From Ranitomeya imitator (Eukaryota): 64,000 nucleotides of DNA. Shown one piece after another: positions 19,371 through 60,809 of this stretch; within the stretch, counting starts at the first letter, position 1; every line of letters starts with the position of its first letter. The stretch is from contig NC_091285.1 of the NCBI RefSeq assembly GCF_032444005.1, positions 531,340,001-531,404,000 of the forward strand, written 5' to 3'. Both the position numbers and the translations under genes were made by a program. Under the pieces are notes generated by a model. That model ran no database searches and had not been told where the DNA came from. It saw only the letters and a list, made by a program, of their open reading frames with translations.

Positions 19371-19384
19371 ATTCTACCTCCAAC

Positions 19385-19836: not shown

Positions 19837-19845
19837 TAATTCTAA

Positions 19846-24455: not shown

Positions 24456-24459
24456 TTAA

Positions 24460-29370: not shown

Positions 29371-29371
29371 G

Positions 29372-32600: not shown

Positions 32601-33624
32601 CTGGCCCCATGTCTAGTATATTGGGCCGCCTGCCACAATTCTGGTGTGTTGGCTCACCCGCTTCGGGTCTAGCCTCATGTCTGGTCTGTTGGGCCACCTG
32701 CCTCAGGTCTGGCATGTTGGGCCATTTGCCTCAAGTCTGGCCCTATATCTGCTGAGTTGGGCCATTCGACCCGAGTCAGGTGACATGTCTAGTGTGTTGG
32801 GACCGCCGGCCTCCTCGTGTCTGATTTGTTGGGCTGCCCAATTCAGGTCTGGTCTTGTGTCTGGTGACTTCGTGTCTAGTGTGTCTGGTCTTGTGTCTGG
32901 TTTGTTAGGCCACCCACCTGGGGTTTGGACCTTGGGTCCTGTCCCATGTCTAGTGTGATGGGCCGCCTGCCTCTGGTGTGGCTTTATGTCTGGTGTGTTA
33001 GACCACCTGCCTCGGGTCTGGCCCTATGTGTGTTGTGTTCGGCAGCCTGACAGGGGTTTGGCCCCGTGACTGGTGTGTCTGGCCACCTGTCCCTGGTCTG
33101 ACGTGTTTGGTGTGTTGGGCCGCCCACCTTGTGTCTGGCCCCGTGCCACTCCAACATTATTCAGATTCTTATTTATATACAGCAAAGCATCCATTTTGTC
33201 TGCAAGCTTATATTTTGGATATCTTCAACCAGGATACATATCCTTAACATGGTGTATTGGGCCGCCTGCCTCTGGTCTGGCCCCATGTCTGGTGTGTTGG
33301 GTTACCCGCCTTGAGTCTGGCCCTATGTCCTTAACATGGTGTATTGGGCCGCCTGCCTCTGGTCTGGCCCCATGTCTGGTGTGTTGGGTTACCCGCCTTG
33401 AGCCTGGCCTTATGTCTGGTGCTTTTTGGCATCCTTTTCGGGTCTGTTCTCATGTCTGGTGTTGGTCCTCCAGACTCGGGTATGGCCTCATGTTTGGTTG
33501 ACGTTTGTCTGGTGTGTTGGGTTGCTTGCCCCAGGTCTGGCTTCGTATCTGAGTGTTGGGTAGCCCACTTTGAGTCTTGCCCTATGTCTGGTGTGTTGGG
33601 CTGCCCACTTCAAGTTTAACCCCG

Positions 33625-34873
33625 TGTGACGGACAAGGGAGAATCCATTTTGGATTTTAAGTTCAGGACATCTCCTTCCACTCCTGAAATGTGCCCCCTC
33701 CATTGGGATTCCACAGGCTCATTGTTTTCTTTTAATTAAAAGAGCTAGTGTGAACTCTTCTGCAGCTATAGCAACCGGAACCTCTTTGTGTGACCAAGCA
33801 TATGGCACAGCAAGGCTATGAGGTATGGAATCTGGAAAATGACCTATTGTATAATAAGAGAATGCAAAATATCTCTAAGATGAGCCGAGCACATATTCCT
33901 TTCCCCACGTGCCCATATTACTTAGCCATCTGTAGCACTCTGGATTATGGAGTTATAAAACATAGCTAGCAGTAATTACATACGGTAGTCAGATTTAGTC
34001 TCTATGTGCAGATAAAATCCAGCGGAATCCAGTGGCGGTACAACCAATCCATTCAGAGCTTCGGGCTCAAAGTTATGGGCCAGCCACAGTTGTAGGCAGG
34101 AAATCATATTCTCAGATATGGGAGGAGAGAAGCTGCACCACCCAGGGGTGGGAGCAGATGGGTGAAGTAGCAGCCTAGGAGATATAAGGCAGCCCCTCAT
34201 TTAGGTCTGGGTTTTCTGATGGCCGGAGCATACGTTTGCTGACGCAGCCCGGAAAGCCTGTAACTAAGATTTGGACCTGTGATCCATCAGCGCCTCCCTG
34301 TGGTCACATGCTACATAACATTGCAACCTATCTATACCCTATCCTTGTACTACACTCCTGACTGTATATATTTGCTCTTGTATGTATAGCTGTATGTTCT
34401 AGTGCGCCTCCTCGGCGATTAAATATAAAATTAGTCTTTGGCTCCTCTTTTATCTCGATCCACAAATCCCCATGTCTGCACACTCCGTTGGTTATCTTAT
34501 ACACTGCCGCAGGGTTGGTTCCTGACCCGATATAATTCTGCTGTCGTATGGGGCTTATTTTAAATGAGGAACTGGTGGCAGAATACCGTATTGTTTTAGT
34601 GAGGAATTCTGGCAGTGACGGCCGGGAGGTTTAGATATCCCCAGGCTGGACTGGTAATATATATCCCAACCCCCCCCCTTCCCCACGGGGAGCGCCTCTC
34701 TAACTTGTACCTGTAAGGGAAGTCTTTCTGGTGACTATTTGCCCTCAGTGCAGTTCCCTGACTGACCTGAGGCAAGTTGTGGTGCTAGAGAGCCGATCCC
34801 TGCCGGGTCCTTCTCTTTCCTCCCCCCGAGGTGAGTGAAGTCGCCGCCCCCTTTCCCTGTGAGATCCCTTACA
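33625..34873. mobile_element. Solo LTR (1249 bp) in the satellite
   Basis: tgtgacgg...ccttaca with a 5-bp TSD CCCCG. The empty site matches the paralogous caagtttaaccctgtgacagatgtg at ~35407. Confidence 0.88.
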
Positions 34874-37800
34874 CCCCGTGACTGATGTGTTGGGCTGCCC
34901 ACTCAGGTCTGGCCCCATATCTGGTGTGTTGGGCCGCCCGCCTAGGGTTTGTCCCTGTGCCTAGTGTGTTAGGCCGAGCACTTTTGGTCTGGCCCATTGT
35001 CTGGTGTGTTTGTCTGCCCTCATTTGGTATGGCCCCGTGTCTGGTGTGACGGGTCTGGTAAATCTGGTGTGCTGGGCCACCTGCCTTGGGTCTGGCCCCG
35101 TGCTTGGTGTGTTGGGCCGCTCACCTCTGATTTTTGTCGTGACTGGTGTGTTGGGTCTGGCCTTGTGTCTGGTATGTTGGGCCGCCCATTTCGGTTCTGA
35201 CCCCATGTCTGGTGTATTTAGCCACCCACCTTGAATCTGGCCTCACGGCTGATGTGCTGGTCCACCCGCCTCGGGTATGACCTCGTGTCTGGTGGCCATT
35301 TGTCTGGTGTGTTTGGTTGCTTGCCTCAGGTCTGGCTTCGTATCTGGAGTGTTAGGTAGCCCACTTTGAGTCTTGCACTATGTCAGGTGTATTGGGCTGC
35401 CCACTTCAAGTTTAACCCTGTGACAGATGTGTTGGGCTGCATGCTAAGGTCTGGCCCCATATCTGGTATGTTTGGTGCCCCACTAGTGTTTGTCCCCGTG
35501 CCTAGTATGTTAGGCCGAGCGCTTTGGGTTTGGCCCATTGTCTGGTGTGTTGGACCGCCTGCCTTGCGTCCGGCTTCGTGTCTGGTGTGATGGGTCTGGT
35601 CTCATGTCTAGTGTGTTGGGCCACCCGCCTTGGGTCTGACCTGTGTCTGGTGTGTTGGGCCGCCCACCTCAGTTGACCCCGTTTCTGGTGTTTTGAACAG
35701 CCCATCTCGAGTCTGGCCTCTTGTGTTATGTGTTGGGCCACCCGCCTCTTGTCTGGCCTTGTGTCTTCTGGCCCTATGTCTGGTGTGGTAGGCTGCCCAC
35801 CTCAAGTTGGGCCTTGTGTCTGGTGTGTTAGGCCACCCACCTTGGGCTTTGTACAGGTTTGGAGTGTTGGGCTGTCAGCCTCGGGTGACCCCATGTCTAG
35901 TGTGTTGAACCACCTGCCTCAGTTCTGACTTCTCTGGATCTGGCTCTGTGTCTGGTGTGTTGGGCCGCCTGCCTCAAGTCTGGCTCCATGTCAGGTGTGT
36001 TGAGCCCACCCGCCTCTGGTTTGGCCCCGTGTTTGATGTGTTCGGCAGCCAACTTCAAGTCTGTCTTTACGTCTGGTATGTTGAGCTGCCCGCTTCAGGT
36101 CTGACTTTATTTCTGGTGTGTTGGGTCTTGCCTCTTGTCTGGTGTGTTGGTCCACCTGTATTGGAACTGGCCCCATGTCTGATTTATTCATCTGCCCATT
36201 TTGGGTTTGGCCTTGTGTTTGGACCTCCCACCTTGTCACATGTCTGGTGTGTTAGGCTGCCTGCCTCGGGTCTGACTTAGTATCTGGTGTGTTGGGGCAC
36301 CCGTGTTGTCTGGCCCCATGTCTGGTGTATTGGGCCTCCCACCTCGGGTCTGGCCCAATGTCTGATATGTTTGGTCTTATCTCGTGTCTGGTATGTTGGG
36401 CTACTGTCTTCGTTCTGGCCCCATATCTGGTGTGTTGGGTTGCCGCCTTGGGTCTTGCCCTATGTGTGGTGTGTTTCGCCGCCCGCCTCAGGTTTGGCGC
36501 CCTGTCTGGTGTGTTTTGCTGCCCACTTCGAGTCTGGCCCCATATCTGGTGTGTTACGCCACCTGCCTCAGGTTTGGCCCCGTGTCTGATGTGTTCAGCA
36601 GCCCATTTCAAGTGTGACTTTACGTCTGGTATGTTGGCCTGCCCACTTCAGGGCTGGCCCTTGTCTGGTGTATTGGACCGCCCATTCCTTGGGTCTGGAC
36701 CAATGTCCGGTGTGTTAGGCTGCCTGCCTTGGGTCTGGCCCTGTTACCTGTGTTAGACCACTCACATCGAGTCTGGCTCTGTGTCTGGTGTGTTGAACCG
36801 CCCACCTCTTCCTAACCCATTGTCTAGTGTGTTGGGACGCCCAACTCGGGTCTGATTTCTTGGGCCATTCTGGCTCTGTATCTGGTGTGTTGGGCCACCG
36901 CCTATGGTTTGGCTCCTTCTCTGGTGTGTTGGACTGTCTGCCTCGGGTCTGGCCCCATGTCAGGTGTGTTGGGCCTCCCACCTGGGGTTTGGCCCCATGT
37001 TTGGTGTGTTGGACCTCTTGCCAAGTTGGGTCTGGCCCAAAATTCTGGAGTGTTGAACCGTCTGTCCTGTTGGGCTGCCTGCCTTGGGCCTGGCCCTGTT
37101 ACCTGTGTTAGGCGACTCGCATCGAGTCTGGCTCTGTGTCTAGTGTGTTGAGCCCCCGCCTCCCGCTAACCCCTTGTCTAGTGTGTTGGGAAGCCCGCCT
37201 CAGATCTGGCTCATGTCTGGTGTGTTGTGCCGCCTGCTGCAAGTCTGATTTATTGGGCCATTCTGTCCCTGTGACTGGTGTGTTGGGCCACCCGCTTATG
37301 GTTTGGCCCCTTCTCTGTTGTTGTGTTGGGCTACCTTTCTCAGGTCTAGCCCCATGTCTGGTGTGTTGGGCCATCCGCCTCGGGTTTGGCCCCTTGTATT
37401 GTGCATTGGTCTGCCTGCCTTATCTGGCCTTATGTCTGGTATGTTGGGTCGCCCACCTCGGGTTTGGTTTGTTGGGTATCCCGTCTTGGGTCTGGCCACA
37501 AGTCTAATGTGCTGGGCCATGTGCCTCAGTTCTGGACCCGAATTTGGTGTGTTGGGGCGCCCACCTTTGGTCTGGCACCATGTCTGGTGTGTTGGGCTGA
37601 ATGCCTCAGGTCTGGCCCTGTCTTGTGTGGTGGGCTGCCCGCTTCAGGTCTGGCCCCTTGACTGGTGAGCCCGACCGCCCATCCCCTGGGTTTTTCCCTG
37701 TGTCTTTTGTGTTGAGCTGCCTGGCTCTGTCTAACCTCTGGGTGTGTTGGGATACCCGACTCGGGTTCTGGTCCATGTCTGGTGTGTTGTGCCGCCCGCC

Positions 37801-40065
37801 TCGCGTCTTATTTGTTGGGCTGTTCTGGCCTTGTGTTTGGTGTGTTGAGAGGTCTTCTGATTAAGGTATGGCTCCTTCTCTGGTGTGTTGGATTGTATGC
37901 CTCGGGTCTGGCCCCATGTCTGGTGCATTGGACCGCTGCCTTAGGTCTGGCCTTATGTCTGGTCTGTTGGGCCACCTGCCTCAGGTCTGGTGTCTTGGGC
38001 ACCCCCATCTTGGGTGTGGCCCCGAATCTACTGTGCTGGCTGCGCTCTTTGGGTCTAGCCTGTTTCAGGTGTGTTGGCTCGATTGCCCGAAGTCTGCCCC
38101 CTGTCTAATGTATTGAACTGCCTGCCTCGGGTCTGACCCTGTGTCTGAAATGTTGGGCAGTGCGCCTTTGGTCTGGTCCCATGTCTGGTGTGTTGGAATG
38201 CCTGCTTCGTGTTAGGTCTCATGTCTGATGTACTGGGCTGTCTGCCTCAGGTCTGGCCCATTTCTGGTATGTTGGGCCACCCACCTGGGGTATGGCCCCA
38301 ATTCTGGTGTGTTGGACTGCTCTTCTTGGGTCTAGTCCCTGGTCTGGTGTGTTCTGCTGCCCTCCCGCCTCGTGTGGTGCTGTGTCTGCTATGTTGGTCT
38401 GCCCACTCATGTTTGGTGTGTTGGGGTGCCCGCCTTGGTTCTGGCCCCATATCTGGTATGTTGGGTTGCCCGCTTCAGGTCTGGCCCTTGTCTGGTCTGT
38501 TGGCCCGTTATTTGGTGTGTTGGCCCCATGTCTGGTGTGTTGGGCTGCGTGCAGTGTCTGGCCCTGTTACCTGATGTGTTGGGCCACTCGCATCTGGTCT
38601 GGCCCTTGTCTAGTGTTTTGTGCCGCCTGCTTCAGTTCTGATTTGTTGGGCAATTCTGGCCCTGCGTATAGTGTGTTGGGCCACCCACTTATGGTTTGGC
38701 CCCTTCTCTGGTGTGTTGCGCTGTCTGCCTCTGCCCGCCTCAGGTTTGGCTCCTTGTTTGGTGCGTTGGGTTGCCTGCCTTGCATCTGGCCCTATGTCTG
38801 ATGCCCACCTCGGGTTTGGTGTATTGGGCAGCCCGTATTGGGTCTGGCCAAAAATCTAGTGTGTTGTGCCATATGCCTCGAGTCTGGACCCATGTGTGGT
38901 GTGTTGGGGTGCCCACCTTGGGTCTGGCACCATGTCTAGTTTGTTGAGCCGAGTGCCTTAGGCTTGGCCCCTGTCTGGTGTGTAAGGCTAGCCGCTTCAG
39001 GTCTGGCCCCTTGACTGGTGTGTTGGACAGCCCATCTCTTGGGTCTGGCCCTGTGACTGGTGTGTTGGGCCGCCCGCCTGGGGTCTGACTTTTTTACATG
39101 ATATGTGGTGCAGTTCACCTCGAGTCTGCCTCTTTGTCTGGCCACCCACCTCAGGGTGGCCCTCTGTCTGGTGTGTTGGGCTGCCCTCTTCAGGTCTGGC
39201 CCATTGTGTAGTATGTTGGACCACCCATCCCTTTGGTCTATTCCCATGTCTGGTGTGTCGAGCTACCTGCCTTGGGTCTGGCTCGTTACCTGATGTGTTA
39301 GGTCATTCACATCAAGTTTGGCTCTATGTCTTGTGTGTTGGGCTGCCCACCTCTGGCTAACCCATTTTCTACTGTGCTGGGACGACCGTCTCGGGTCTGG
39401 CCCATATCTGGTGTGTTGTGCTGCCCGCCTCGGTTCTGATTTGTTGGGCTGTTCTGGCCCTGTGTCTAGTGCGTTGGTACGCCTGCCTCGGGTCTGGCTC
39501 CATGTCTGGTGCATTGGGCCATCCGCCTCTGATCTTGGCCCATGTCTATTGTGTTGGGTCACCCGCCTGGGGTTTGGCCCTGTGTCTGGTGTGTTGGGCC
39601 TCTTGCCTTGGGTATGGCCTCGATTCTGGTGTGTTCGATCGCCCGTCTTGGGTTTAGCCCTGTGTCTGGTGTGTCCTGCTTCCCGCGCACCTTGTGTGAC
39701 CCCATGTCTATTGTGTTGGTCTGCCCACTCATGTCCGGTGTGCTGGGCATCTTGTCTTGAATCTGGCTTTGTCTGGTGTCAGGCCACCTGACTCAGGTTT
39801 TGCCCCGTGTCTGGTACGTTTGGGACACCTGCATCGGTTTTGGTGTGTTGGGCCACCCGCCTTGAATCTGACTCAGTGTCTGGTGTCCTATGTCTGGAGA
39901 GTTGGATCGTCCTCCTCGGATCTGGCCCCATGTCTGGTATATTGGGCTGGCTGCCTTCCATCTGGCCCCCTGTTTGGTGTGTTGGACCGCTCGCATAGGG
40001 CCTAACCCTGTGTCTGGTGTGTTGGGCCACATGCCTCAGTTCTAGTCTCTTGTCTGGTGTATTGG

Positions 40066-41562
40066 TGTTACGCTCACGCCCTGACTGGTGGGCGTGAGCT
40101 CGGGGGTTTTGTGGCCCCACTGTGCCAGAAACCAGACTACCCTGGAAGGGGCGTGACTAACAGCTGCCTGGGTTTTCACTGGAGCCTCTGATGGTGAGGA
40201 CAGGCTTGTGCAGCAGGCAGCTGCCAGGTGCTACTCCAGGGTGGTGTCTGGCTGTGGCTGCTGATCCCACTTGGGAGACTGGAACACATGGATTGGTGCG
40301 GGCATTAGGCAGGACTGGCAGAAGAGCACGGCTGGAACACGGACGAGTAGGCTGGCATGGCTGAGACAGGGCTGGCAGAGAACACAGGGCTGGCAGAGAC
40401 ACGGCAGGAAACAGGACTGGTTGATGTGGTATATGAAGGAACAGGTAAGGGCCTGTTCACACTGGACGTGCAGGTACAGATATGTAGTTTGGAACACAGG
40501 GCTGGCAGAGACACGGCAGAGAACACAGGGCTTGCTAGGACGGCAGGAGACACAGGACTGACTTAGGACGGCAGGAGACAGGACTGGCTAGGACGGCAGG
40601 AAACACAGGACTAGCTGATGAGATATTAGAATCAGGCTGCACTCAGATGACACCCGAGTGCAGTCCAATTGTGAGTGAGATGAAGGAACAGGTAGGGATA
40701 TATAGTTTGGAGGAACAGGTAGGGACCTGTTCACACAGGAGAGGAGTGAAAGACTGCAGATAGGAATGGAAAAGCAGCAAGCGGTAGCGTAGCGACAAAA
40801 GCTGAGCAGAGCCACAAAGAATGTGGAGAGAAGCTGCAGCAAGAGATACTGCAGAAGCTAAGCAAAGTGGAACCGCAAGGATTGCAGAGAGGAACTGCAG
40901 CAAGAGGTTTCTGCAGCAACGGGAGCGGAGCAGAGTAAGACGGAGCAGAACCGCAGAAGTGCAGAGCAGCGGTAAAGCCACCAAGATGCAGAGCAGGCAG
41001 AACCGCAAGAGTGCAGAGTGTAAGCAGACTGAGAACACAAGGAAAGACACAGCAGGGAAGGAAGCCACACACAAGGAGACCGAGATAAGACCAAGTACAG
41101 ACAAGGCAATGGAACAAGACACAAGGACAAAGACACAGGGACCAGGATATTCTGCCTCCTGGAGGGCGGACAAAGATCAAGGCAAATGCACAGAGAAAAG
41201 CCTCCAGAGAGGGAGTAACATAGAGCAAGGCCAGGCAAACTCAGAAGCAAAACACTAACTGAGCAAACACATTGCACAGGCCCAGACCACAGGGTGGAGC
41301 TGCACTATATACAGGAGGCCTCTTGGCAATTGGCCAGAAGCACCTTAGGGAGGTGCACACAGTCTCAATAAGAATCCGGAGTGGCTGGCGCCACCCCCCT
41401 ATGCACACGGCCAGGAAGTGTACACAGAGCAGGCCGCCATGAAGCACATGGCATGGAACCAGCAGCAGACAGATCTCACAGCATGGCACTGGGTGAGTGA
41501 GTAGATGTAGCAGGCAGGTGGGGAATGGAAGGCCATGCAGTGATGCCGACAGGGTTGTTACA
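40066..41562. mobile_element. Solo LTR (1497 bp) in the satellite
   Basis: tgttacg...gttaca with a 5-bp TSD ATTGG (40061-40065, 41563-41567). 10-bp-arm terminal hairpin and internal short repeats. Confidence 0.85.
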
Positions 41563-44500
41563 ATTGGGCTGCTCGCCATGAGATTGGTCCATGCCTGGTG
41601 TGTTGGGCTGCCTGCCTTGAGTCTGGGCCCATATTTGGAGTGTTTGGTCGCCCGCCTCAAGTCTGGCCCCTTGATTGGTGTGTTGGACCGCTCACCTAGG
41701 GTCTAGCCTCGTGTCTGGTGATTTGGGCTGCCTATCTCGGGTTTGGCTCGGAGCCTGGTGTGTTGGGCTGCCTACCTCGGGTATAGCCCTGTGTGCGTGT
41801 GTGTGGCTCCCTGATTTGGTTAAGGTGTATCGTGCCGCCCGCCTGACTCTTTTACCTGATGTGTTGTTGGGAAGCTCGCCTCGAATCTGGCTCTGCATCT
41901 AGTGTTGGGCCGCCCGCTTCCAGTATGGCTCTATCTCTAGTGTGTTGGATTGTTCTGATGTTGTGCGCCTGGCTGTGTGCCTCCTGCCTCAAGTCTGGCC
42001 TCATGTACGGTGTGTTCGGCCACCCGCCTCATGTCTGGACACGTGTCTGGCCTCGTTTCTGATATGTTAGACCACCAGCCTCGGGTCTAGCCCCATGTCT
42101 GGGGTGTTGGACTGCTTGCCTCAGGTTTGGCCATGTGTCTGGTGTGTTGGGTCTCTAGCCTCTGGTCTGATCCTGTGTCTGCTCTGTTGGACCACCCGCT
42201 TCGGGTCTTGCCCCATATCTGGTGTGTCGGGTAGCATGCTTTGGGTCTGGTGTGTTGGGCTGCCCCCACTCCTCAGGTCTGGTGTGTTTGGCTGCCCACA
42301 TTCCCCATGTGGCCCCATGTTTGGTGAATTGGCTGTCCACTCACCCTGGGTTTGGTGTGTTGGATTACACGCCTGGCCCCTTGTCTGGTGTGTTAGGGCA
42401 ATCGCCTTGGGTCTGGGCCCTTGTCTGGTGTGTTGGACTGCCCACCTTGGGTCTGGCCTCGTGTCTAGCTCCCTGTCTGGTGTGTTGGACTGAACACCTT
42501 GGGCTTGCCCTTGGGTCTGGTATGATTGGCCACGTGCCTCGGGTCTGGTCCTGTGTCTTGTGGGCTGGGCAGCCTACCTCAGGTCTGGACCCATGTACAG
42601 TGTTTTGGGATGCCTGTCTCTGTTCAGGTGTGTTGGGCCACCCACCTCAGGTCTTAATTGGTTGAGCAACTCGGTGTCTTGCTCTGTATGGGGTGCATGC
42701 CTTGGGTCTGGCCCCATGCTAGGTGTGTTGGGCATTGTGCCTCGGATTTGCCTTGTGTCCGCCACGGGTTTTTCATGTTTCTAGTGTGTTCAATCAACTG
42801 TTTCAAGTGTGTCCCTGTGTTGGGCCACCCTCCTTGGGTCTGGCCCCATGTCTGTCCTTATGTCTGGTGTGTCGGGCCGCCCGCCTTGCGTCTGGCCCCA
42901 TGTCTAGTGTATTGAGCCTCCTGCCCCATATAGCCCTGTGTCTGGTGTGTTGGTGCCCACCCAGTGTATGTTGTGTTGGATCATGTGCCTTGGGTCTGAC
43001 CCCATGACTGGTGTTGGACCCTTTACTTTGGGCCTGGGCCTGTGTCTGGTTTATTTTGTCACCCACCTCAGGTTTTTCCTGCTTCTAGTGTGTTGGGTCG
43101 TCTGCCTCAAGTGTGAACGTGTGTCTCTTGTGTTGAACTGCCTGCCCCATATGGCCCTGTGTCTGGTGTGTTGGGATGCCTGCCCACCTCATGTCTGGTG
43201 TTCTGGATCATGCCTCATCAGGCCTTTTTCTGGTGTATTTGGTCTGCCTGACTTGGGTCTGGCCCCATGTCTGGTGTTTTGGGTGCTTGCTTCGGGTCTG
43301 GCCCCGTGTCTGGTGTGTTGGGCCGCGTGCCTCGGTTGTGGTATGTTGGGCCACCTACCTCGAGTATAGCACTTTGTCTGGTGTGTTGGGCTGTCCCCTT
43401 CACATCTGGGCCCTTGTTTGTTGTCGTGGGTCACCCCCCTTGGGTCTGGCCATATGTCTGGTGTGTTGGACTGCCCATCTTGGGTCTGGCCTCGTGTCTA
43501 GCTCCCTGTCTGGTGTGTTGGACTGAACACCTTGGGCTTGCCCTTGGGTCTGGTATGATAGGCCACGTGCCTCGGGTCTGGCCCTGTGTCTTGTGGGCTG
43601 GGCAGCCTACCTCAGGTCTGGACCCATGTACAGTGTTTTGGGATGCCTGTCTCTGTTCAGGTGTGTTGGGCCGCCCACCTCAGGTCTTAATTGGTTGAGC
43701 AACTCGGTGTCTTGCTCTGTATCTAGTGTGTTCAGCTGCCTGCCTTGAGGTGGCACCTTGTCTGGTGTATTGGGTCGCCTGTCTCAGGTCTGACCCTGTG
43801 TCAAGAGTGTTGGACCGACTGCCTCGGGTCTGCCCCATATCAGGAGTGTTGGGCTGACTGCCTCAGGTCTAACCCTGTGTGTGGTGCTTTGGGCCACGTG
43901 CCCCGAGTCTGACCCAGTGTCTGGTGTGTTGTTCTGATCTGGCTTGTGTCTGGTGTTTTGATCTGTCCGCCACGGGTCTGGCCCCGTGTCTGGTGTGTTG
44001 GGCCACCCGCCTCGTGTCTGGCCCAGTATCTGTTCTGCTGGGCTATCTGCCTTGGGTCTGGCCTTGTGTCTAGTGTGTTGGACCCCACTGCTCAGGTCTG
44101 GCCCCATGTTTGGTGTGTTGGGCTGCCCACTTTGGGTCTGGTGTTTTGCGCTGCCTGTCTCGGTTCAGGTGTGTCACGCCACTTGCCTTGGATATGGCTC
44201 TGTGTCTAGTTTGTTGGGCCGACCACCTCGGGTCTAGACACTCTGCTTGGTGTGATGGGGTACTTACCTCAGGTCTGATGGGTCTGGACCTGTGTCTAAT
44301 GTTTTGTGCCACCTGCCTGGAATCTGGCATGTGTCTGGTGTCTTGGGCCGCCCGCCCCAGGAATGGTCATGTCATTGGTGTGTCGGGCTTCATGTTTGGT
44401 GTGTTTGGCCACCTGCATCGGGTCTGGCCCCATGTCTGGTGTGTTGAGCCACCCACCCTATATGGCCCTGTGTCTGATGTGTTGGGATTCCCGTCCTTGC

Positions 44501-44666
44501 CCTTCCACCCCTTGTTGGTTTACGTGCTTTGGGTCTGGCTGACCCCTTGTCTGGTGTGTTGGGGTGCCCACCTTGTGTCTGGCCCCATGTCTAGTGTGTT
44601 GATCCACTTGCCTCGAACCTGCCCTGTGTCTGGTGTACACACCAAACACGGACCAGACTTAAGGTG

Positions 44667-44825
44667 TAAAAACGTAATTCCAGCTCACCCAGTTGCTCTA
44701 TGCTCAACAGGACTGGATTTTCCTTTTCTTTTTCAAAAGAAAATATAGTGCATACAAACGAAAAATTTACATGGTCGACATGACCTAGTCGACGCATTTT
44801 GACTGCACTAGGCAGTCTTACTCAT
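44667..44825. other. 159-bp unique insert flanked by an 11-bp direct repeat
   Basis: GACTTAAGGTG at 44656-44666 and 44826-44836. Confidence 0.75.
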
Positions 44826-47800
44826 GACTTAAGGTGGGTAGACAAAACACCATAATTAGGGATAGACACTAGGCGGGCAGTCCAACTTACCAGATCTGGG
44901 CCTAGACTCGAGGCGGCCAGCCCAACACACCAGACACGAGGCTAAGCCTGATGCGTGTGGCCCAACACCTCAAACATAAAGCCAGATCCAAGGCGGGCAG
45001 CCCAACACACCAGACACGAAGCCAGACCTTAGGCAGGTGGCCCAGCACACTACACATGGGGCTGGATCCATCGCGGGCAGCCCAACATAGCAAACACTAA
45101 GCCAAAATTGAGGCATGTATCCGAACACACCAGACACAAGGCCAGATCCAAGGCAGGTGGCAGAACACATCAGACATGAGATCAGACTCGAGGCTGGCAA
45201 CTCAACACACCAGACACGGGGCCAGACACAAGACTGGCAGCATAACACACCACACACAGGGCCAGACACGAGGCAGGCTGTCCAACACACCATACACAAA
45301 CCAGACACGAGGCGGGTGGTACAATACACCAGACACAGGGACAGACTTAAGGTGGGCAGCCCAAAACACCTGAAATGGAGACAGACACTAGGCAGGCAGC
45401 CCCGGGGACCAGACCTGGGCCTAGACTCCAGGCAGCCGACCCAACACACCAAATACGGGGCAAGACCCGAGGCACTTGGCCCAAAAACGAAGACACAGGT
45501 CCGGACAAGAGATGAGCGACCCAATGCACCAGACAAAGGGCCAGACCTGAGGTGGACATCCCAATACTCCAAACATGGGGCCATACCAGAGGTGGGCGGC
45601 CCAATACATCAGACACGGAGCCAGACACAAGGCGGGTGGCCCAACACACCAGACATGAGGCAAGACCTGAGGTGGGAGGCCCAAAACACCAGACACAGGG
45701 CCAAACCCAATGCCAGCAGACAAACACACCAGATATTGGGCCAGACCCAATGTGGGTGGGCCAACACACCAGACATAAAGTCAAACTTGAATTGGGCTGC
45801 CAAACACATCAAACACAGGGCCAAACCTGCGGCTGGTGACCCAACACACCAGATACAGGGCCAGATCCGAAGAAGCCAGGGGTTGACCCGAGGTAGGCAG
45901 CCTAACACTCCAAACCCGGGCAAAGCATAAGGCGGGTGGCCTAACACACCAGACACAAGACCCAACCTGAGTTGGGTGGCTTAACACACCAGACACAAGG
46001 CTAGACAAGAGGTGGGTGGGCCAACACATGACACAAGAGGCCAGAATCGAGACAGGCAGTTCAACACACCAGACACGGGACTAAGCCTGAGGCGGATGCC
46101 CCAACACACCAGACTCAAGACCAGACCCAACACACCAGACACCGGGCCGAACCCAAGGCGGTCGTCCCAACACACCAGACACTGGGCCAGACCCAAAGTG
46201 CTCAGCCTAACACACAAGGCACGGGGACAAACCATAGGCAAGCGGCTCAACACATCAGATATGGGGCCAGACCTGAAGCGGGCAACCCAACACATAAGTC
46301 ACGAGGTCAAAATTGAGGCGGGGGGCCTAACACACCAGACATAGGGCCAGACCCAAAGTGCGCAGCCCAACACACCAGACAAGAAGCCAGACCTAAGGCA
46401 AGCGACCCAACCACCAGACAAACAACCACCAGATACGAGGTTATACACAAGGCCATACAGATCAGACACAAGGCCAGACTCAATGTGGGTGGCCAAACAC
46501 ACCAGACATGGGGTCAGAGCCGAGATGGGTGGCCCAACATACCAGACATGAGGCTAAATCCAACACACCAGTCACGTGACCAGACTAGAGGTGGGAGTCC
46601 CAACACACCAAACACGGGTCCACTCTTTAAGTGGGAGGCCGGACACACCTGAGACACAGCCAGACCTGAAGTGGGTGGCCTAACACACCAGACAGGGGGC
46701 AAGACCCAAAGCGGGCATCCAAACACACCAAACATGGGGCCACACCCAACACACCAGACATGCGGCCAAGCCCGAGGCGGGTGGCCCAAAACACCAGGTA
46801 TGGGGCCAGACTCGAGGCAGGTGGCAAAACACACCAGACAAGGAGTCAAACCTGAGGCCGGCAGCGAAACAGACCACACATAGGGCCAGACCCAAGGCAG
46901 GCAACCCAACACACTAGACATGGGGCTAGAACGGAGACAGGTGGCCCAACACACCAGACACGAGTAAGAGCAAATGCATCAGACATTAGGCAAGACCCAA
47001 GGCAGGTGGCCCAACTAGACATAGGGCCAGATCTGAACAAATCAGAACTGAGGCAGGAGGTCCATCACATTAGACATGGGGTCGGACCCGAGGCTGGCAG
47101 CCCAACACTTCAAACCTGGGCAAAGTCCAAGACAGTTGGCCTAACACACCAGACACAAGGCCAGATCTGAAATGGCGGCCTACCACACCAGACACAGGGC
47201 CAGCAGACACAAGGCCAGACAAGAGGAGGGTGGCCCGACACATAACGCAAGAGGCCAGACTCCAGATGGGCAGCTCAACACATCAGACAAGGGGCCAAAC
47301 CGAGGTGGGCAGCCCAACACACCAAACACAGGGCCAGAACCGAGGTGGACTGCCCAACACACCAGACATGGGTCAAACCCAAGGCGGGCTGCCCAACACA
47401 GCAAACATGGGGACAAGCCTGAGTCGGGCAGCCCAAAACACCAGACATGGGGCCAGACCCAAGGCGGGCAGCCCAACACACCAGACACGAGATCCGACCC
47501 AACACACCAGACATGGGGCTAGACCAAAGGGGGGGCAGCTCAACACAACAGACACTGGGCCAATCCCAAATCACTCGGCCTAACCCACAAGGCATGGAGA
47601 CAAACCCTAGGTGAGCGACCGAACACACCAGATATGGGGCCAGACCTGAGCGGGCAGCCCAACACTCCAGATAAGAAGCTAGACCTGAGGCAAGCAGCCC
47701 AACACACCAGACAAACGGCCAGGCGGGCAGCAGAACACACCAGACATGGGGCTAGACCCAAAGCGGTGGCCTGACACCAGATATGGCCCAATTCATCAGA

Positions 47801-49134
47801 CACGAGGCCAGACCCGAGGCAGGCATCCCAGCACACCAGAAACAGAACCAGACTCAATGTGAGTGACCTAACATATCAGGTACATGGCCAGACCCAAGGC
47901 AGGTGGCCCAACACACCAGACATGGGGCCAGACCCATGGGATGGGCGGTCCAACAGACCAGTCAAGGGGTCAGACCTGAATTGCGCAGCCCAACACCAGA
48001 GAGGCACTAGTCCCAACACACCAGACATGGTGCCAGACCCAAGGTGGGCACCCCAACAAACTAGACACGGGTCCAGACCCGAGGTGAGTGGCCCAACACA
48101 CTAGATTTGTGGCCAGATCCAAGATGGGCTGCCCAATAAACCAAATCCATGTTGTGCGTCGCAACATGCCAGACATGGGGCCAGATGCAAGGCAAGTAGC
48201 CCAACGCACCAGACAAGGGGCCAAACCCGAGGCAAGTGGCCCAACACATCAGACACAGGGCTAAAATGGCCCAGCAACTCAAAACTGGAGGCGGGCAGAA
48301 CACCACACAAGACATTGGCCAGACTTGAAGGGGGCTTTCCAACACACTAGAAAAGTGGCTAGCCAGAGGCGGGCTGCGCAACACACCAGACACAGAGCCA
48401 GACTCGATGCGAGTAACACATCATGTAATTGGGCCAGACCTGAGGCAGGCGGCCCAGCACACCAGACACAGGGCCAACACACCAGGCAAGGGGCCATCAG
48501 ACCAGACAAAGGGCAAGACCCGAAGCGGGCAGCCAAACACACCAGATATGGGACCAGACCCAAGGCGAGCACCCCAACACACCAGACACAAGTGGGCAGA
48601 CACTGCGCCACTCGAGGCGGGAGGGCAGCAGAACACACCAGACACGGAGCAAGACCCAAAATGGGCGGTCTAACACCGCCCAATACACCAAACATGGGGC
48701 CAAACCTCAGGCGGATGACCCAACTTACTATACATGGGCCCAGACCTGAGGAAGATGGCCCAATACATCAGACATGAGACCTAACACGGGGCCAGACCCG
48801 AAGCAGGCATCCCAACACACCAGACATGGGGCCATACAAGAAACAGGCTGCCCAACACTTCAGACACAGGGCCAGACCCAAGGCAAGCAGTCCAACACAT
48901 TAGACAGAGGGCCAGACTCGGGCAGTCGAGCCACCAACACACCTGGAATGGGCTAAACCTGAAGCTCGCAGCCCAACATGCTAGATTCAGGGCAAAACCC
49001 AAGATGGGGTGTCCAACACACCAGATCCGAGGTAGGGCCAGACCTCAAGACCCGCGGCACGGCTCAACACATCAGACACAAGCGGGCAGCCCAACACAAC
49101 AAACACCAGGCCAGACTAAAGGCTGGCAGCCCAA

Positions 49135-49230
49135 CATGTTAGGACATGTTAGGCTATGGGTTGAACTAGATGGACTTATAGTCTTCCTTCAACCTTAATA
49201 ATAACTATGTAAATATAACTATAACTATGT
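49135..49230 (+). mobile_element. Very short CR1 3'-end insertion
   Basis: gttaggctatgggttgaactagatggactta..gtcttccttcaacc..ataactatgt closely matches 23720-23780. Confidence 0.85.
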
Positions 49231-50753
49231 AACACACCAGACACAAGGCCTGACATGGGACAGGCGGGTTCAACAAACCTGAAATGGGCCAGATCCGATT
49301 CTTGTGGCCCAGCACTCTATATTCATGGCCAGACCTAAGAAGGGCAGCCCAACATGCCAGACATAGGGCCAGAAGCCAGGCAGGTGGCCAAACGCACCAG
49401 ACAAGGGGCCAAACCCGAGTCATGCATCCCAACACAAATAAATCATGGGGCCAGACCTGAGGCAGACAGCCCAACACACCAGAGAAGGCGCCAAACCATA
49501 CGTGGGTGGCCCAGCACACCAGACACAGGGCCAGAATGTCCAAACAAATCAGAACCAAGGTGGGCGGCACAACACACTAGACAAGGATTTAGCCAGAGGC
49601 GTTTGGATGAACACACCAGACAAGGAGCCAGACTTGACGTGATTGGCCTAACACATCAGGTAACAAGGCCAGACCCGAGGCAAGCAGCCCAACACTCCTG
49701 ACACGGTTCCAGACCCCAGGGATGAGCGGTCCAACAAACTAGACAAGGGCCAGACCTAAAGCAGGCAGCCAAATACACCAGACATGGGGTTAGACCCAAG
49801 GTGGTGCCCGAACAAACCAGACATGAGCGGTTAGCCAACCCACCAGACACTGTGCCACTTGAGGTGGGTGAACAGCAAAACGCACCATACACAAGGCTAG
49901 ACCCAAGACAGGTGGTCCAACACACCAGAATCGGGGCCAGACCCAAGGCGAGAGTCCCAACACAACAGATACAGGGGCAAACACCAGGTGGGTGTCCTAA
50001 CACCCCAGACATGGCCCCAGATCTCGGGCGGCCCAATACATCAGAAATGAGACCAGAGAAGAGGTCAGTCGCAAGGCAGGCGTCTCAACACACCAGACAT
50101 GTGTACAGTTCCAAGGCGCTGCCCAACACACCAGACACGGATGAGGAGACCAACACACCAGACATGGGGCTACACAAGGCGGGCAGACAGCAGTACACAC
50201 CAGACCCAACACACCAGAATCAGGGCCAGACCCAAGGCGAGAGTCCCAACACACCAGATCCAGGGGTAAAGACCAGGTGGGTGTCCTAACACCCCAGACA
50301 TGGCCCCAGATCTCAGGCGGATGGCCCAATACTTCAGAAACAAGACCAGAGAAGAGGTCAGTCATGAGGCAGGCATCTCAACACACCAGACATGTGTACA
50401 GTTCCGAGGCGCTGCCCAACACACCAGACATGGACGAGGAGTCCAACACACCAGACATGGGGCTGCACAAGGCGGGCAGACAGCAGTAAACACAAGACAT
50501 GGGGCTAGACACAAGACAGGTGGTCCAACACACCAGACATGGGGCCAGATCAGAGGCGGGTTGCCCAACACATTAGACACAGGGGCAGAGCCAAGATGGG
50601 GTGTCTAACACACCAGACCCGATGGGGTCAGCCAGAGGCAGATGGCTCAAGATACCAGACAAAGAGCCAGATCATAACATCATAACATGGCCAGACACGA
50701 GGCAGACAGCTTAAGACACACCAGACACAGGGCAAGACCCATGGCACTCTGCC

Positions 50754-53427
50754 CAACACACCAGACATGGGGCCAGGACTCTAACCCAACACACCAGTCA
50801 CGGACGGGCAGACAAACACACAAGACATGGGGCCACATTAGGTGGGCGGACAGCAGAACACACCAGACAAGGGGCTAGACCCAAGGCAGGCAGTCCAACA
50901 CTCCAGAAACGGGGCCAGACCCTAGGCAAGACTATCAACGCACCAGACACGGGGCCATACTAAGGCGGGTGGCCCAAAACACCAGACAAGGAGCCCAGAC
51001 CTGAAGCAAAAGGCCCAATACATCAGAAAGGAGGCCAGACATAGGGCAAGACCCAAAGCAGGCATCCCAACACACCAGACAAGGGGCCAGACCAAAGATG
51101 GGCTGCCCAACACCTTGGACACAGGGGGTCAGTCGGGGCAACACACCTCAAATGGGTTAGACCCGAGGTGTGCAACCCAACACAATAGATTCAAGGCCAC
51201 ACCCAAGACTGGAGTTGAGCGAATTTGCTTGGGTCCCTGCTTATTCGCCAAGGTATAGCGCTTACCAAATAATCTGCAGAGGAAACCCAGCTTCCTGGAT
51301 CACTCCGGCTGATCAGCTGTTCAGCTCCGCATCTGCATGTGTCGCGGCTGTGTGACAGTCACAACACATGCATGGAGAGCCTGTTTGTTGGTGCCCAACT
51401 CACCAGACCCAAGGTGGGCTGCACCAGACATAGGGCCAGACCCATGGGCAGGCAGCACAACGCACCAGACATGGGCCAGACCTGAAGTGGGTGTCCCAAC
51501 ACATTAGACACGGAATGGTTAGCCAGAGGCTGGCGGCTCAACACACCAGACATAAGTGGCCTAACAAACACATCAATCAGGTAACAGGGCCAGACCCGAG
51601 GCAGGCAGCCAAACACACCAGACGATGGGCCAGACCCAAAGGATGGGCAGTCCAATGCACCAGTCAAGGGCCAGACCTGAAGCAGGCAGCCCAACACAGA
51701 ACACATCAGACCACGGGGTAAGACGGGTTGTCCAACACGCCAGAAACAGAGCCAGACTTGATGTGAGAGGCCCAGACACATCAGGTAACAGGGCCAGAAA
51801 TGAGGCCAAACCCAAGGGGTGGGCGAGGTCCAACACACCAGACCCTTAAGCGGGCATCCCAGCACACCAGACAAGGAGCCAGACCCGTGGCACTTGGCCC
51901 AACACACCAGACATGAGGCCAGAAACAAGGCAGGCATCCCAATACACCAGACACGGGTCCAGACCCAAGGTGCTGCCCAACACACCATACACGGGCGGGC
52001 AGACCAACACACCAGACACAGGGCCACATGAGCTGGGCAGCAGAACACACCAGAATGGCACAACAAATCACAAATCATAACTGAGGCAGCCACAACACAC
52101 CAGACATGGGGCCAGGACTCTAACCCAACACACCAGTCACGGACGGGCAGACAAACACACAAGACATGGGGCCACATTAGGTGGGCGGACAGCAGAACAC
52201 ACCAGACAAGGGGCTAGACCCAAGGCAGGCAGTCCAACACTCCAGAAACGGGGCCAGACCCTAGGCAAGACTCAACCCACCAGACACGGGGCCATACTAA
52301 GGCGGGTGGCCCAAAACACCAGACAAGGAGCCCAGACCTGAAGCAAAAGGCCCAATACATCAGAAAGGAGGCCAGACATAGGGCAAGACCCAAAGCAGGC
52401 ATCCCAACACACCAGACAAGGGGCCAGACCAAAGATGGGCTGCCCAACACCTTGGACACAGGGGGTCAGTCGGGGCAACACACCTCAAATGGGTTAGACC
52501 CGAGGTGTGCAACCCAACACAATAGATTCAAGGCCACACCCAAGACTGGAGTTGAGCGAATTTGCTTGGGTCCCTGCTTATTCGCCAAGGTATAGCGCTT
52601 ACCAAATAATCTGCAGAGGAAACCCAGCTTCCTGGATCACTCCGGCTGATCAGCTGTTCAGCTCCGCATCTGCATGTGTCGCGGCTGTGTGACAGTCACA
52701 ACACATGCATGGAGAGCCTGTTTGTTGGTGCCCAACTCACCAGACCCAAGGTGGGCTGCACCAGACATAGGGCCAGACCCATGGGCAGGCAGCACAACGC
52801 ACCAGACATGGGCCAGACCTGAAGTGGGTGTCCCAACACATTAGACACGGAATGGTTAGCCAGAGGCTGGCGGCTCAATACACCAGACATAAGTGGCCTA
52901 ACAAACACATCAATCAGGTAACAGGGCCAGACTCGAGGCAGGCAGCCAAACACACCAGACGATGGGCCAGACCCAAAGGATGGGCAGTCCAATGCACCAG
53001 TCAAGGGCCAGACCTGAAGCAGGCAGCCCAACACAGAACACATCAGACCACGGGGTAAGACGGGTTGTCCAACACGCCAGAAACAGAGCCAGACTTGATG
53101 TGAGAGGCCCAGACACATCAGGTAACGGCCAGAAATGAGGCCAAACCCAAGGGGTGGGCGAGGTCCAACACACCAGACCCTTAAGCGGGCAGCCCAGCAC
53201 ACCAGACAAGGAGCCAGACCCGTGGCACTTGGCCCAACACACCAGACATGAGGCCAGAAACAAGGCAGGCATCCCAATACACCAGACACGGGTCCAGACC
53301 CGAGGTGCTGCCCAACACACCATACACGGGCGGGCAGACCAACACACCAGACACAGGGCCACATGAGCTGGGCAGCAGAACACACCAGAATGGCACAACA
53401 AATCACAAATCATAACTGAGGCAGCCA
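50754..53427. repeat. Recent ~1.34-kb tandem duplication (50754-52092 / 52093-53427), including a non-satellite insert (51211-51383 / 52548-52720)
   Basis: Identical ORFs at 51170 and 52507. Fewer than 10 differences seen by eye. Confidence 0.92.
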
Positions 53428-53555
53428 CAACACACAAGACATGGGCCAGACCCGAGGAGGTCGTCCCAACAAACTAGACAAGAAGTTAAGGCGGGTGGCT
53501 AAACTGAGTCGATGTGAATGACCCAACATGTCAGGTAACAGGGCCAGACAGACAC

Positions 53556-54389
53556 AAGGTGCGGGGTCTGGAAGAAAGAATAGCAACTTTGAAACTCATC
53601 AAAGAGAATGAAGACTTTCTAGACAGAACAGAAGCATCTCTACTGGTCACAGAAGGTGCAAAAAGTGTCAGAGAACCTCCAAAAGCAGATGAGTGGAAGC
53701 ATGTGACCAAAAGAAGCAAGAAGACCATGGAGAAATCACCAACCACACAACTGAAGAACCGATATCAAATCTTTGTAGAGGATGAAGATGGCACACCTAA
53801 GAATGAAGCAATACCAGCAAGCAAAAAAGAAAAGGGCACACAGCAACTAGTTACAGCAAAAAGTACAGCCAAGAAGCAACGAAGAATGGTGGTGGTGGGA
53901 GACTCACTACTGAGAGGCACCGAAGCAGCCATCTGCAGACCGGACATAACTGCAAGAGAAGTATGCTGCCTTCCAGGTGCGATGATCAAGGATGTGACCG
54001 ATAGGATACCAAAGCTCTTCAGCTCCAAGGACGTCCACCCATTTCTTCTGATACATGTTGGCACCAATGAAACGGCAAGGAAGGACCTACCGACAATCTG
54101 CAAGGACTTTGAAGAGTTGGGGAAGAAAGTAAAGGAACTGGATGCACAGGTAGTTTTTTCTTCTATCCTTCCAGTAGACGGGCATGGCACCAGGAGATGG
54201 AACAGGATCCTTGATGCAAACAACTGGCTAAGACGATGGTGCAGACAACAAGGATTTGGATTCCTGGACCACGGTGTGAATTACTGGTATGATGGACTCC
54301 TCCCCAGAGACGGACTACACCTCAACAAACCTGGGAAACACACATTCACCAGAAGACTCGCTACACTCATCAGGAGGGCGTTAAACTAG
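53556..54389 (+). CDS. CR1 ORF1, 5'-truncated (coiled coil plus SGNH esterase)
   Basis: VVVGDSLLRG, HVGTNE, DGLHLN, ending RALN*. The first residues of the listed ORF (53514) come from the satellite. Confidence 0.88.
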   Translation, partial: KVRGLEERIATLKLIKENEDFLDRTEASLLVTEGAKSVREPPKADEWKHVTKRSKKTMEKSPTTQLKNRYQIFVEDEDGTPKNEAIPASKKEKGTQQLVTAKSTAKKQRRMVVVGDSLLRGTEAAICRPDITAREVCCLPGAMIKDVTDRIPKLFSSKDVHPFLLIHVGTNETARKDLPTICKDFEELGKKVKELDAQVVFSSILPVDGHGTRRWNRILDANNWLRRWCRQQGFGFLDHGVNYWYDGLLPRDGLHLNKPGKHTFTRRLATLIRRALN

Positions 54390-54526
54390 AAGAAGAGGGG
54401 ACGGGAAGAAAAACATTAGACTCGAACAAAGACGACCCAGGAAAACATACTCAGAAGGGAGGTAAGAACATTTCTAAAACAATCCACAGTGAGGAGATTG
54501 GAACAAAACAAAATCCTCTAAACTGC

Positions 54527-60300: not shown

Positions 60301-60809
60301 AGACCCGAGGCGGCGACCCAACACACCAGACACTGGGCCATACCCGAGGCGGGCGACCCAACACACCAGACACTGGGCCAGACCCGAATTTGAAGACCCC
60401 ACACACCAGACACTGGGTCAGACCCGAGGCGGGTGACCCATCACACCAGACACTGGACCAGACCCGAGGTGGGGACCCCAACACGCCAGACACTGGGCCA
60501 GACCTGAGGCGGGCAACCCAACACACCAGACTCTGGGACAGACCGAGGCGGGCGGCCCATCACACCAGCTTGCTGCAATTGTCAGCGCATTCCGCAAAAA
60601 ATACGCCAATGAAAGTCTATGAGGCGAGAAAAATACGGATTACATACGGACCATGCGTGTGACTTGCGAGAAATACGCAACACTTTCCCAGGTGACAGGA
60701 AATGGGCCAAGCCATTATCAGGAAGCTTAGACATGCTAATTAGCTCAAAAAACGCTCCAGACATCCCAGAAGAACGCCTCCACGGAGTCCTGCAGCATGT
60801 CTTCCTTAA

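What the first reader, a model, noticed from the sequence alone, without database searches (positions are those of the whole stretch)
44600..44680. A ~31-kb satellite array flips orientation at a palindromic junction
Seen: about 15 kb of GT-strand monomers meet about 16 kb of the reverse complement at ...ctgGTGT|ACACacca (8-bp palindrome gtgtacac, 44633-44640). The arms are not variant-for-variant mirrors near the junction, so this is not a recent perfect fold-back. The GT-rich strand runs 5'->3' toward the junction on both sides, the polarity seen in end-to-end fusions. Inference: an old inversion, a breakage-fusion event or a fusion of two terminal arrays. The region can form giant fold-back DNA or dsRNA if transcribed through. 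No outer TIR or TSD was seen, so a foldback transposon is unsupported.
Basis: partly seen in the sequence, partly recalled or inferred. Interest (0 to 1): 0.7.

Follow-up and report, generated by a model that had tools for sequence, protein, structure and literature searches.

The report
Old strand flip in frog satellite
A decayed, transposon-riddled 40-base satellite array in a poison-frog genome reverses strand once, at a clean head-to-head joint; such old inversion-type scars are well documented in other genomes' satellites, so it is real-looking but ordinary.

Summary
A 40-bp satellite runs on the GT strand from 29,818 to 44,636 and on the CA strand from 44,637 to 60,568. There is one strand switch and no minority-strand monomers in either arm. 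About 7.3 kb of the 30.75 kb is later transposon insertion.

- **Joint:** it lies in the (GT)3 core of the monomer on both sides (phase 9 against 11), which creates GTGT|ACAC. A half-palindrome of 4 or more occurs at 1.3% of random joins of these arms.
- **Arms:** they are not mirror copies. Identity at the mirror register is 0.67, equal to background. Their outer flanks are unrelated.
- **Monomer pool:** both arms draw on one pool, with identical consensus and 0.667 between-arm against 0.664/0.671 within-arm identity. They also share 78-84% higher-order blocks.

The best reading is an old inverted join inside one ancestral array, followed by in-place decay. Three other readings fail:

- **End-to-end fusion:** there is no telomere repeat at the joint.
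- **Foldback transposon:** there are no matching termini or target-site duplication.
- **Strong fold-back DNA or dsRNA:** only 1.8% of positions have a perfect 21-nt complement in the other arm.

Public contigs cover both arms at single-copy depth, but none listed bridges 44,581-44,803, so a misjoin is unlikely but not excluded. Satellite strand switches are well documented in human T2T assemblies. Interest is low.

The parts
29818..44636 (+). Left arm: 40-bp satellite on the GT strand, ending at monomer phase 9. About 12.1 kb of satellite plus two TE insertions.
44637..60568 (-). Right arm: same 40-bp satellite, with the GT strand on the minus strand. It starts at monomer phase 11. About 11.3 kb of satellite plus five TE insertions.
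44633..44640 (.). Head-to-head joint GTGT|ACAC with no filler and no spacer. GGTGTAC occurs nowhere else in either arm, so the central GTAC was made by the join.
44667..44829 (.). 163-bp fragment of a very high-copy interspersed repeat, inserted into an in-phase CA-strand monomer 30 bp right of the joint. An 11-bp direct repeat lies at 44,656-44,666 and 44,826-44,836. Its order relative to the flip is unknown.
   Evidence: repeat identical; word depth about 37,000 against about 10 single-copy; other copies diverge at 44,667 and 44,829
33628..34873 (.). 1.25-kb insertion (TG...CA ends) in the left arm, flanked by the 7-bp direct repeat CCCCGTG.
40066..41563 (.). 1.5-kb solo-LTR-like insertion (TG...CA) in the left arm with the 5-bp target duplication ATTGG.
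49137..49230 (+). 94-bp 3' stub of a CR1-type LINE, with the same ACTATGT-type tail as the LINE at 53.5-57.4 kb.
50751..53449 (.). Recent 1.37-kb direct tandem duplication inside the right arm (99.1% identity). It carries a 190-bp insertion in both copies (51,213-51,402 and 52,550-52,739).
53481..57420 (+). LINE insertion: esterase-type ORF1, then endonuclease and reverse transcriptase split over two ORFs. The first ~25 nt of this interval still read as satellite.
57421..60568 (-). Outer right block: a younger subfamily of the same satellite. It is 85% identical to consensus, 77% pairwise, has more CpG and two diagnostic consensus changes.

Best explanation
This is a real, old strand switch (an inversion-type breakpoint) inside what was once a single unidirectional 40-bp satellite array of a poison-frog chromosome. 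Inferred steps: a double-strand-break repair event joined two stretches of the same array head to head, both ends lying in the short GT run of the monomer, with no filler and no recognisable microhomology. This was either an inversion whose second breakpoint lies at or beyond the array edge, or an inverted join between non-allelic parts of the array. Afterwards both arms decayed in place at the same rate (about 21% from consensus, CpG loss) and took up LTR, LINE and other insertions. Homogenisation was only local (a 1.37-kb duplication, and the young outer right block). The joint has no demonstrated function and is best read as a structural scar. Shown: the single switch, the shared monomer pool, the lack of mirror symmetry, the TE insertions and the unrelated flanks. 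Inferred: the repair mechanism, the single-array origin and the age.
For: One clean switch and complete strand purity in both arms. The L and R consensus sequences are identical. Mean monomer identity is 0.667 between arms against 0.664 and 0.671 within arms. Only 1 of 40 positions differs between arms at p<0.01, and nearest neighbours fall in the other arm at least as often as expected. Inter-arm blocks of 200-700 bp at 78-84% identity match the best old intra-arm blocks. Divergence from consensus is a uniform 0.74-0.81 along both arms, with no gradient at the joint. Several TSD-flanked TE insertions interrupt in-phase monomers. The window contains no N. Run X1 contigs cover both arms near-identically at about 10x single-copy depth, and contigs of a second study and of a close relative also match both arms at about 99%. 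Technical fold-back chimeras give perfect mirror arms, which these are not. Strand switches with TE invasion in old, diverged satellite layers are documented in human T2T centromeres.
Against: No listed public contig bridges 44,581-44,803, so the joint itself is unverified by reads. Only one breakpoint is visible in the window. A simple inversion needs a second one, which would have to lie exactly at the array edge or outside the window. The two best-matching inter-arm domains lie in the same left-to-right order (Spearman +0.7 to +0.8). Neither a simple inversion of a tandemly duplicated array nor a fold-back predicts that order, although it amounts to about one bit of information.
Confidence: 0.65

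Rival explanations
1. Ancient fold-back or sister-chromatid (U-type, breakage-fusion-bridge) inverted duplication. The arms began as exact mirror copies around a hairpin or short spacer, and point mutation plus array turnover have since erased all mirror signal.
For: The join is at nearly the same monomer phase on both arms (9 against 11). It is palindromic more often than random joins (p about 0.013). The shared higher-order domain lies at broadly similar distances from the joint on both sides. Fold-back junctions typically carry 2-8 bp of inverted microhomology.
Against: Mirror-register identity is 0.56-0.68 against a background of 0.60-0.65 over the first 2.8 kb. No mirror diagonal appears in the block matrix, and block order is parallel, not mirrored. 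The outer flanks are not mirrored, and the outer array ends are at different phases. With a star-like monomer divergence, a duplication later than the original amplification should still show excess mirror identity.
Confidence: 0.15
2. Assembly artefact: two unrelated stretches of the satellite were joined in opposite orientation inside a contig.
For: No listed contig of the best DNA run bridges 44,581-44,803. A repeat with word depth about 37,000 lies 30 bp from the joint.
Against: There is no N in the window. The arms share no near-identical overlap that could mislead an overlap assembler: the best match is 84% over about 300-400 bp and the longest exact match is 36 nt. They are not mirror copies, as missed-adapter chimeras would be. 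Both arms sit at the same single-copy depth of about 10, and no loose end at 44,636/7 appears among those listed. The join is phase-matched and palindromic, which is unlikely for a random chimera.
Confidence: 0.1
3. Head-to-head fusion of two terminal (subtelomeric) arrays from different chromosome ends.
For: The GT-rich strand runs 5'->3' into the joint from both sides. The satellite family is multi-locus, since many paralogous contigs were laid.
Against: There is no telomere repeat at or near the joint. The only short CCCTAA/TTAGGG tracts are 24 and 17 kb away, inside flanking composite repeats, with the G strand pointing outward. The arms show no arm-specific variants and share post-amplification blocks, as expected for one array. 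The window lies more than 523 Mb into its sequence piece, which says nothing either way.
Confidence: 0.04
4. A giant foldback-type transposon whose inverted arms are made of tandem 40-bp subrepeats.
For: The overall architecture (inverted arms of tandem repeats meeting with no loop) resembles FB elements. An unchecked note of this scan reports a smaller 'fold-back element with inverted satellite arms' elsewhere in the genome.
Against: The outer ends share no inverted terminal sequence. They stop at different monomer phases and have no target-site duplication. Arms of 15 kb with 33% mismatch and independent TE loads do not look like a mobile unit. The right outer block is a different, younger subfamily.
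Confidence: 0.02

Closest known systems
Strand switches (inversion breakpoints) inside human satellite arrays: diverged/monomeric alpha satellite, beta satellite, HSat3 (T2T-CHM13 and pangenome centromere surveys; bioRxiv 10.1101/2021.07.12.452052 and 10.64898/2026.07.22.740206)
   Same: The same monomer family continues on the opposite strand at an abrupt point. The switch lies in an old, diverged array layer that has also collected TE insertions. No function is attached to it.
   Different: Different organism, with a 40-bp GC-rich monomer rather than 171-bp alpha, 68-bp beta or HSat3 units. Only one switch occurs in about 23 kb of satellite here, and its genome-wide frequency is unknown. Chromosomal position (centromeric or not) is also unknown.
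Fold-back inverted duplications (Hermetz et al. 2014, PLoS Genet, PMC3907307) and BFB palindromic sister-chromatid fusions
   Same: Head-to-head orientation, with a short palindromic or microhomologous signature at the joint.
   Different: Those have mirror-identical arms separated by a 0.8-70 kb single-copy spacer, next to a terminal deletion or translocation. Here neither arms nor flanks are mirrored and no spacer can be recognised.
Foldback (FB) transposons of Drosophila and similar long-TIR elements
   Same: Inverted arms built from short tandem repeats.
   Different: This locus has no conserved termini and no TSD. Its arms are an order of magnitude longer and independently decayed.
Head-to-head telomere fusion relics (e.g. 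human 2q13)
   Same: The G/T-rich strand points into the joint from both sides.
   Different: There are no telomeric hexamer arrays at the joint.

Membership tests
Satellite-array strand switch / inversion breakpoint | Same monomer family on both sides, on opposite strands | tested here: met
   Identical arm consensus and equal within-arm and between-arm identity. Core hits are strictly strand-partitioned.
Satellite-array strand switch / inversion breakpoint | Abrupt switch without intervening non-satellite DNA | tested here: met
   The left arm ends at phase 9 at 44,636 and the right arm starts at phase 11 at 44,637. The nearby 163-bp TE is a separate TSD-flanked insertion.
Satellite-array strand switch / inversion breakpoint | Joint present in the organism's DNA (reads span it) | tested here: inconclusive
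   Contigs of run X1 stop at 44,581 and resume at 44,803. None of the listed pieces bridges the joint.
Fold-back / BFB inverted duplication | Arms are mirror copies of each other | tested here: not met
   Mirror-register identity equals background. There is no mirror diagonal, and block order correlates at +0.7 to +0.8 where a mirror predicts a negative value.
Fold-back / BFB inverted duplication | Mirrored outer flanks, or an adjacent terminal deletion or translocation | tested here: not met
   No homology between 21,190-29,817 and 60,569-60,803 on either strand. Terminal context is not testable.
Fold-back / BFB inverted duplication | Single-copy spacer with inverted microhomology at its edge | not testable with these tools
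   The arms are too decayed to delimit a spacer.
Foldback transposon | Matching inverted outer termini and a target-site duplication | tested here: not met
   Outer boundaries at about 29,810 and 60,568 have unrelated flanks, different monomer phases (about 27 against 3) and no direct repeat.
Foldback transposon | Multiple genomic copies with the same ends | not tested
   No eukaryote genome collection is searchable here.
Telomere-telomere fusion relic | Head-to-head TTAGGG/CCCTAA arrays at the joint | tested here: not met
   Runs of two or more hexamer copies occur only at 19,401-20,248 and 62,298-62,309.

The most novel reading that the evidence does not exclude
If transcription reads through the joint, the two arms could form a long, imperfect hairpin RNA. 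About 280 patches of 21-36 nt are perfectly paired and could feed small-RNA silencing of this multi-locus satellite family. One run of unknown library type shows contigs at depth about 300 over 45.7-47.0 kb, which could be RNA.
Probability: 0.05. Interest if true: 0.5.

Novelty: new member of a known kind. Interest (0 to 1): 0.2.

Why it matters
The value is mostly bookkeeping. The finding adds an amphibian example to the catalogue of strand switches in old satellite arrays, and it shows that this frog's 40-bp satellite decays in place with little homogenisation. The joint could serve as a rare-event marker: if it is shared by related dendrobatids, it dates the array and the rearrangement. It does not open a new mechanism or function. 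Neither the suggested cruciform/dsRNA potential nor the chromosome-fusion reading is backed by the sequence.

Tried and rejected
- **Mirror symmetry near the joint:** I compared 400-bp tiles across shifts of -400 to +2000 and found no excess at the mirror register.
- **Larger palindrome including the flanks:** the 388-bp tandem arrays and telomere-like tracts on both sides are inverted relative to each other at about 80% identity. They belong to two copies of a composite TTAA-ended repeat whose ends face the satellite, and the DNA between them and the array is not homologous. I therefore did not count them as part of the event.
- **Same monomer phase at the two outer array ends:** rejected on alignment, which gives phase about 27 against 3.
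- **GTAC microhomology fold-back:** GGTGTAC is absent elsewhere in both arms, so the GTAC was created by the join and did not pre-exist.
- **TE insertion as part of the flip:** the insertion interrupts an in-phase CA-strand monomer and has its own TSD. It is independent, and its order relative to the flip is unknown.
- **Central hairpin:** z = -1.14.
- **CTCF-motif array (a lead from another note of this scan):** 8 matches against 12.8 expected, with only one in the arms.
- **Rfam:** no family hit in the window.
- **Earlier notes of the scan:** searched by sequence and by words for the same satellite or other strand switches. Nothing usable turned up.
- **'Opposite strands' joints in the read table:** these are expected when contigs from unidirectional paralogous arrays are laid on two inverted arms. 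They do not count as evidence of other switches.

Full report
**What is there**

The window is repeat-dense vertebrate DNA. Earlier unchecked notes of this scan attribute the genome to a poison frog, probably Ranitomeya, and the window lies more than 523 Mb into its sequence piece. Tandem Repeats Finder reports a 40-bp unit with only 64-79% matches between copies. It lies on the GT strand from about 29.8 to 44.6 kb and as its reverse complement from about 44.9 to 60.6 kb.

A 12-nt core of the monomer, with two mismatches allowed, gives 222 plus-strand hits. All but two (one near 13 kb, one at 54,284 inside the LINE) lie between 29 and 44.6 kb. It also gives 222 minus-strand hits, all but three scattered ones right of 44.88 kb. 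AT skew flips from about -0.55 to +0.55 at the same point. BLAST finds no inverted match inside either arm. The array therefore reverses strand exactly once.

The sequence at the finding's coordinates is as quoted. The palindrome gtgtacac lies at 44,633-44,640 and the switch falls between 44,636 and 44,637.

**Anatomy of the arms**

A consensus-based coverage map and inspection of the edges show that 7.3 kb of the 30.75 kb is later insertion.

| Position | Insertion | Flanking repeat |
|---|---|---|
| 33,628-34,873 | 1.25-kb element with TG...CA ends | 7-bp repeat |
| 40,066-41,563 | 1.5-kb solo-LTR-like element | 5-bp duplication ATTGG |
| 44,667-44,829 | 163-bp fragment of a very high-copy repeat | 11-bp repeat |
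| 49,137-49,230 | 94-bp CR1-type LINE tail | not resolved |
| 51,213-51,402 and 52,550-52,739 | 190-bp insert, present twice | lies inside a 99.1% tandem duplication of 1.37 kb |
| 53,481-57,420 | 3.9-kb LINE with esterase-type ORF1, endonuclease and reverse transcriptase | not resolved |

In each checked case the satellite continues in phase across the insertion, so the arms were continuous arrays first.

Monomers are on average 74-81% identical to the consensus all along both arms, with about one CpG left per monomer. There is no gradient towards the joint. The exception is the outermost right block, 57.4-60.6 kb. It is a younger subfamily with 85% identity to consensus, 77% pairwise identity and two diagnostic consensus changes.

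**The joint**

Alignment to the consensus puts the last base of the left arm at monomer phase 9 and the first base of the right arm at phase 11. Both ends therefore lie in the short GT run of the monomer. Joining ...GGTGT to ACACACC... creates the 8-bp palindrome.

In 200,000 simulated joins of random positions of the two arms, a half-palindrome of 4 or more occurs 1.3% of the time. The palindrome is thus mildly non-random, but it is a consequence of where the ends lie and not an independent feature. GGTGTAC occurs nowhere else in either arm, so the central GTAC was made by the join. Judged against the consensus there is no filler, no spacer and no shared base that could be called microhomology.

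The 163-bp TE lies 30 bp to the right. It interrupts a CA-strand monomer in phase and has its own target duplication. It is therefore a separate event, and its order relative to the flip cannot be told.

**Are the arms mirror copies?**

They are not. Tiles of 400 bp at distance d from the joint on the left were aligned to the reverse complement of the right arm at d plus shifts of -400 to +2000 bp. Identity at the mirror register was 0.56-0.68, against 0.60-0.65 (sd 0.04-0.09) for the other registers. The mirror register was never the best.

A 500-bp-bin matrix of best HSP identity shows diffuse many-to-many similarity and no diagonal. The strongest inter-arm blocks are 200-700 bp at 78-84% identity. 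They link left 34.9-39.7 kb with right 45.9-51.7 kb and chain in mirror fashion for at most about 1.2 kb. At the larger scale the two domains lie in the same left-to-right order (Spearman +0.7 to +0.8), the opposite of a fold-back. Because only two domains are involved, this is about one bit of information.

The outer flanks are not mirrored either. Nothing in 21,190-29,817 matches 60,569-60,803 on either strand, and the array stops at different monomer phases on the two sides.

**One array or two?**

Among 249 exact 40-nt monomers, the left and right consensus sequences are identical. Mean pairwise identity is 0.664 within the left arm, 0.671 within the right arm and 0.667 between them. Only 1 of 40 positions differs between arms at p<0.01. 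A monomer's nearest neighbour, excluding anything within 1.5 kb, lies in the other arm at least as often as pool sizes predict.

Together with the shared 78-84% blocks, which equal the best old intra-arm blocks, this points to two parts of one ancestral array. It does not look like two arrays homogenised separately.

**Reads**

The stretch 42,700-46,600 is held by two runs of one sample at 0.67-0.71 of sampled words. Several small runs of a second study, and runs labelled as two other organisms, hold smaller shares.

When laid, contigs of run X1 cover 42,700-44,581 and 44,803-46,600 with 0-5 differences per piece at a depth of about 10. I take this as single-copy depth. A run labelled as another organism (X7) matches both arms at about 99%. 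None of the listed pieces bridges 44,581-44,803. De Bruijn contigs are expected to break there because the TE at 44,667-44,829 has a word depth of about 37,000. The joint is therefore neither confirmed nor contradicted.

Several indirect arguments favour a real joint:
- The window has no N.
- No near-identical overlap exists that could mislead an assembler. The best match is 84% over about 300-400 bp and the longest exact match is 36 nt.
- The arms are not mirror copies, as missed-adapter chimeras would be.
- Both arms have equal depth.
- The join is phase-matched.

The 'opposite strands' joints in the table are what contigs from unidirectional paralogous arrays produce when laid on two inverted arms. 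They say nothing about other switches. The many paralogous contigs (1,483 laid for X1) do show that the family is multi-locus.

**Other readings tested**

- **End-to-end fusion:** the only runs of two or more telomere hexamers are at 19.4-20.25 kb (CCCTAA) and 62.3 kb (TTAGGG). None lies near the joint. They sit next to 388-bp tandem arrays that are inverted relative to each other at about 80% identity. They seem to be parts of two copies of a composite repeat whose TTAA-adjacent ends (21,189 and 60,804-60,807) face the satellite. Their G strands point away from the joint.
- **Foldback transposon:** there are no matching termini and no TSD.
- **Fold-back DNA or dsRNA:** complementarity is about 67% in any register. 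Only 282 of 15,912 positions have a perfect 21-mer complement in the other arm, and the longest is 36 nt. The central 300 nt fold with z = -1.14.
- **CTCF-like array (a lead from another note):** not enriched.
- **Rfam:** nothing found.

**Comparison with what is known**

Strand switches inside satellite arrays are well documented. The T2T-CHM13 centromere study counted inversion breakpoints per Mb by satellite family. It found more than 200 in the chr9 HSat3 and the beta-satellite arrays. It describes diverged alpha satellite as accumulating mutations, inversions and TE insertions with age. A 2026 survey of complete human centromeres reports hundreds of switches in beta satellite and HSat3 arrays, scaling with array length and scattered at random. 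It also places about 90% of alpha-satellite switches in monomeric, diverged layers. The frog locus has the same character: old, diverged, TE-invaded, and carrying a switch. Fold-back inverted duplications in humans have mirror arms and a 0.8-70 kb spacer, and these features are not met here.

**Verdict**

The best explanation is an old inverted join within one array, followed by decay in place (confidence 0.65). An ancient, fully erased fold-back duplication is the next best reading (0.15). An assembly artefact comes third (0.10). A terminal-array fusion (0.04) and a foldback transposon (0.02) follow. The finding is a new instance of a known kind and of low interest.

Noticed in passing
window 16,100-21,189 and 60,804-64,000: Two copies of one composite repeat, in inverted orientation, bracket the satellite region. 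Each has a 388-bp tandem array, a degenerate telomere-like hexamer tract and a chain of hairpins ending at a TTAA. They are about 80% identical in the array and hexamer part, and their TTAA ends face inward. The DNA between them and the satellite is not homologous.
   Followed up: partly
window 45,687-46,600 (contigs seem to run on to about 46,990): A small run of unknown library type (X3, 176 M letters) has contigs at depth 280-390 with about 2 differences per 420 nt, where the best DNA run has depth about 10. It could be RNA, a RAD-like library or a capture library. This was not resolved.
   Followed up: no
window 46,106-46,236: Word depth is 11,907 in a run labelled as another organism (X8), against 800 in X1. 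A variant of this satellite seems much more amplified in a relative.
   Followed up: no
window 57,421-60,568: The outer right block of the array is a younger, more homogeneous subfamily with more CpG and two consensus changes. It is separated from the old right arm by the LINE insertion, which suggests local re-amplification at the array edge.
   Followed up: partly
window 50,751-53,449: A 1.37-kb tandem duplication at 99.1% identity carries a 190-bp TE insert in both copies. This shows that unequal exchange still occasionally acts on the old array.
   Followed up: partly
window about 5,400-12,500: Gypsy-type LTR retrotransposon with a zinc-knuckle gag ORF and an uninterrupted 1,247-aa protease-RT-RNaseH-integrase ORF. 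Identical 15-mers at 5,450 and 12,465 suggest its LTRs.
   Followed up: no
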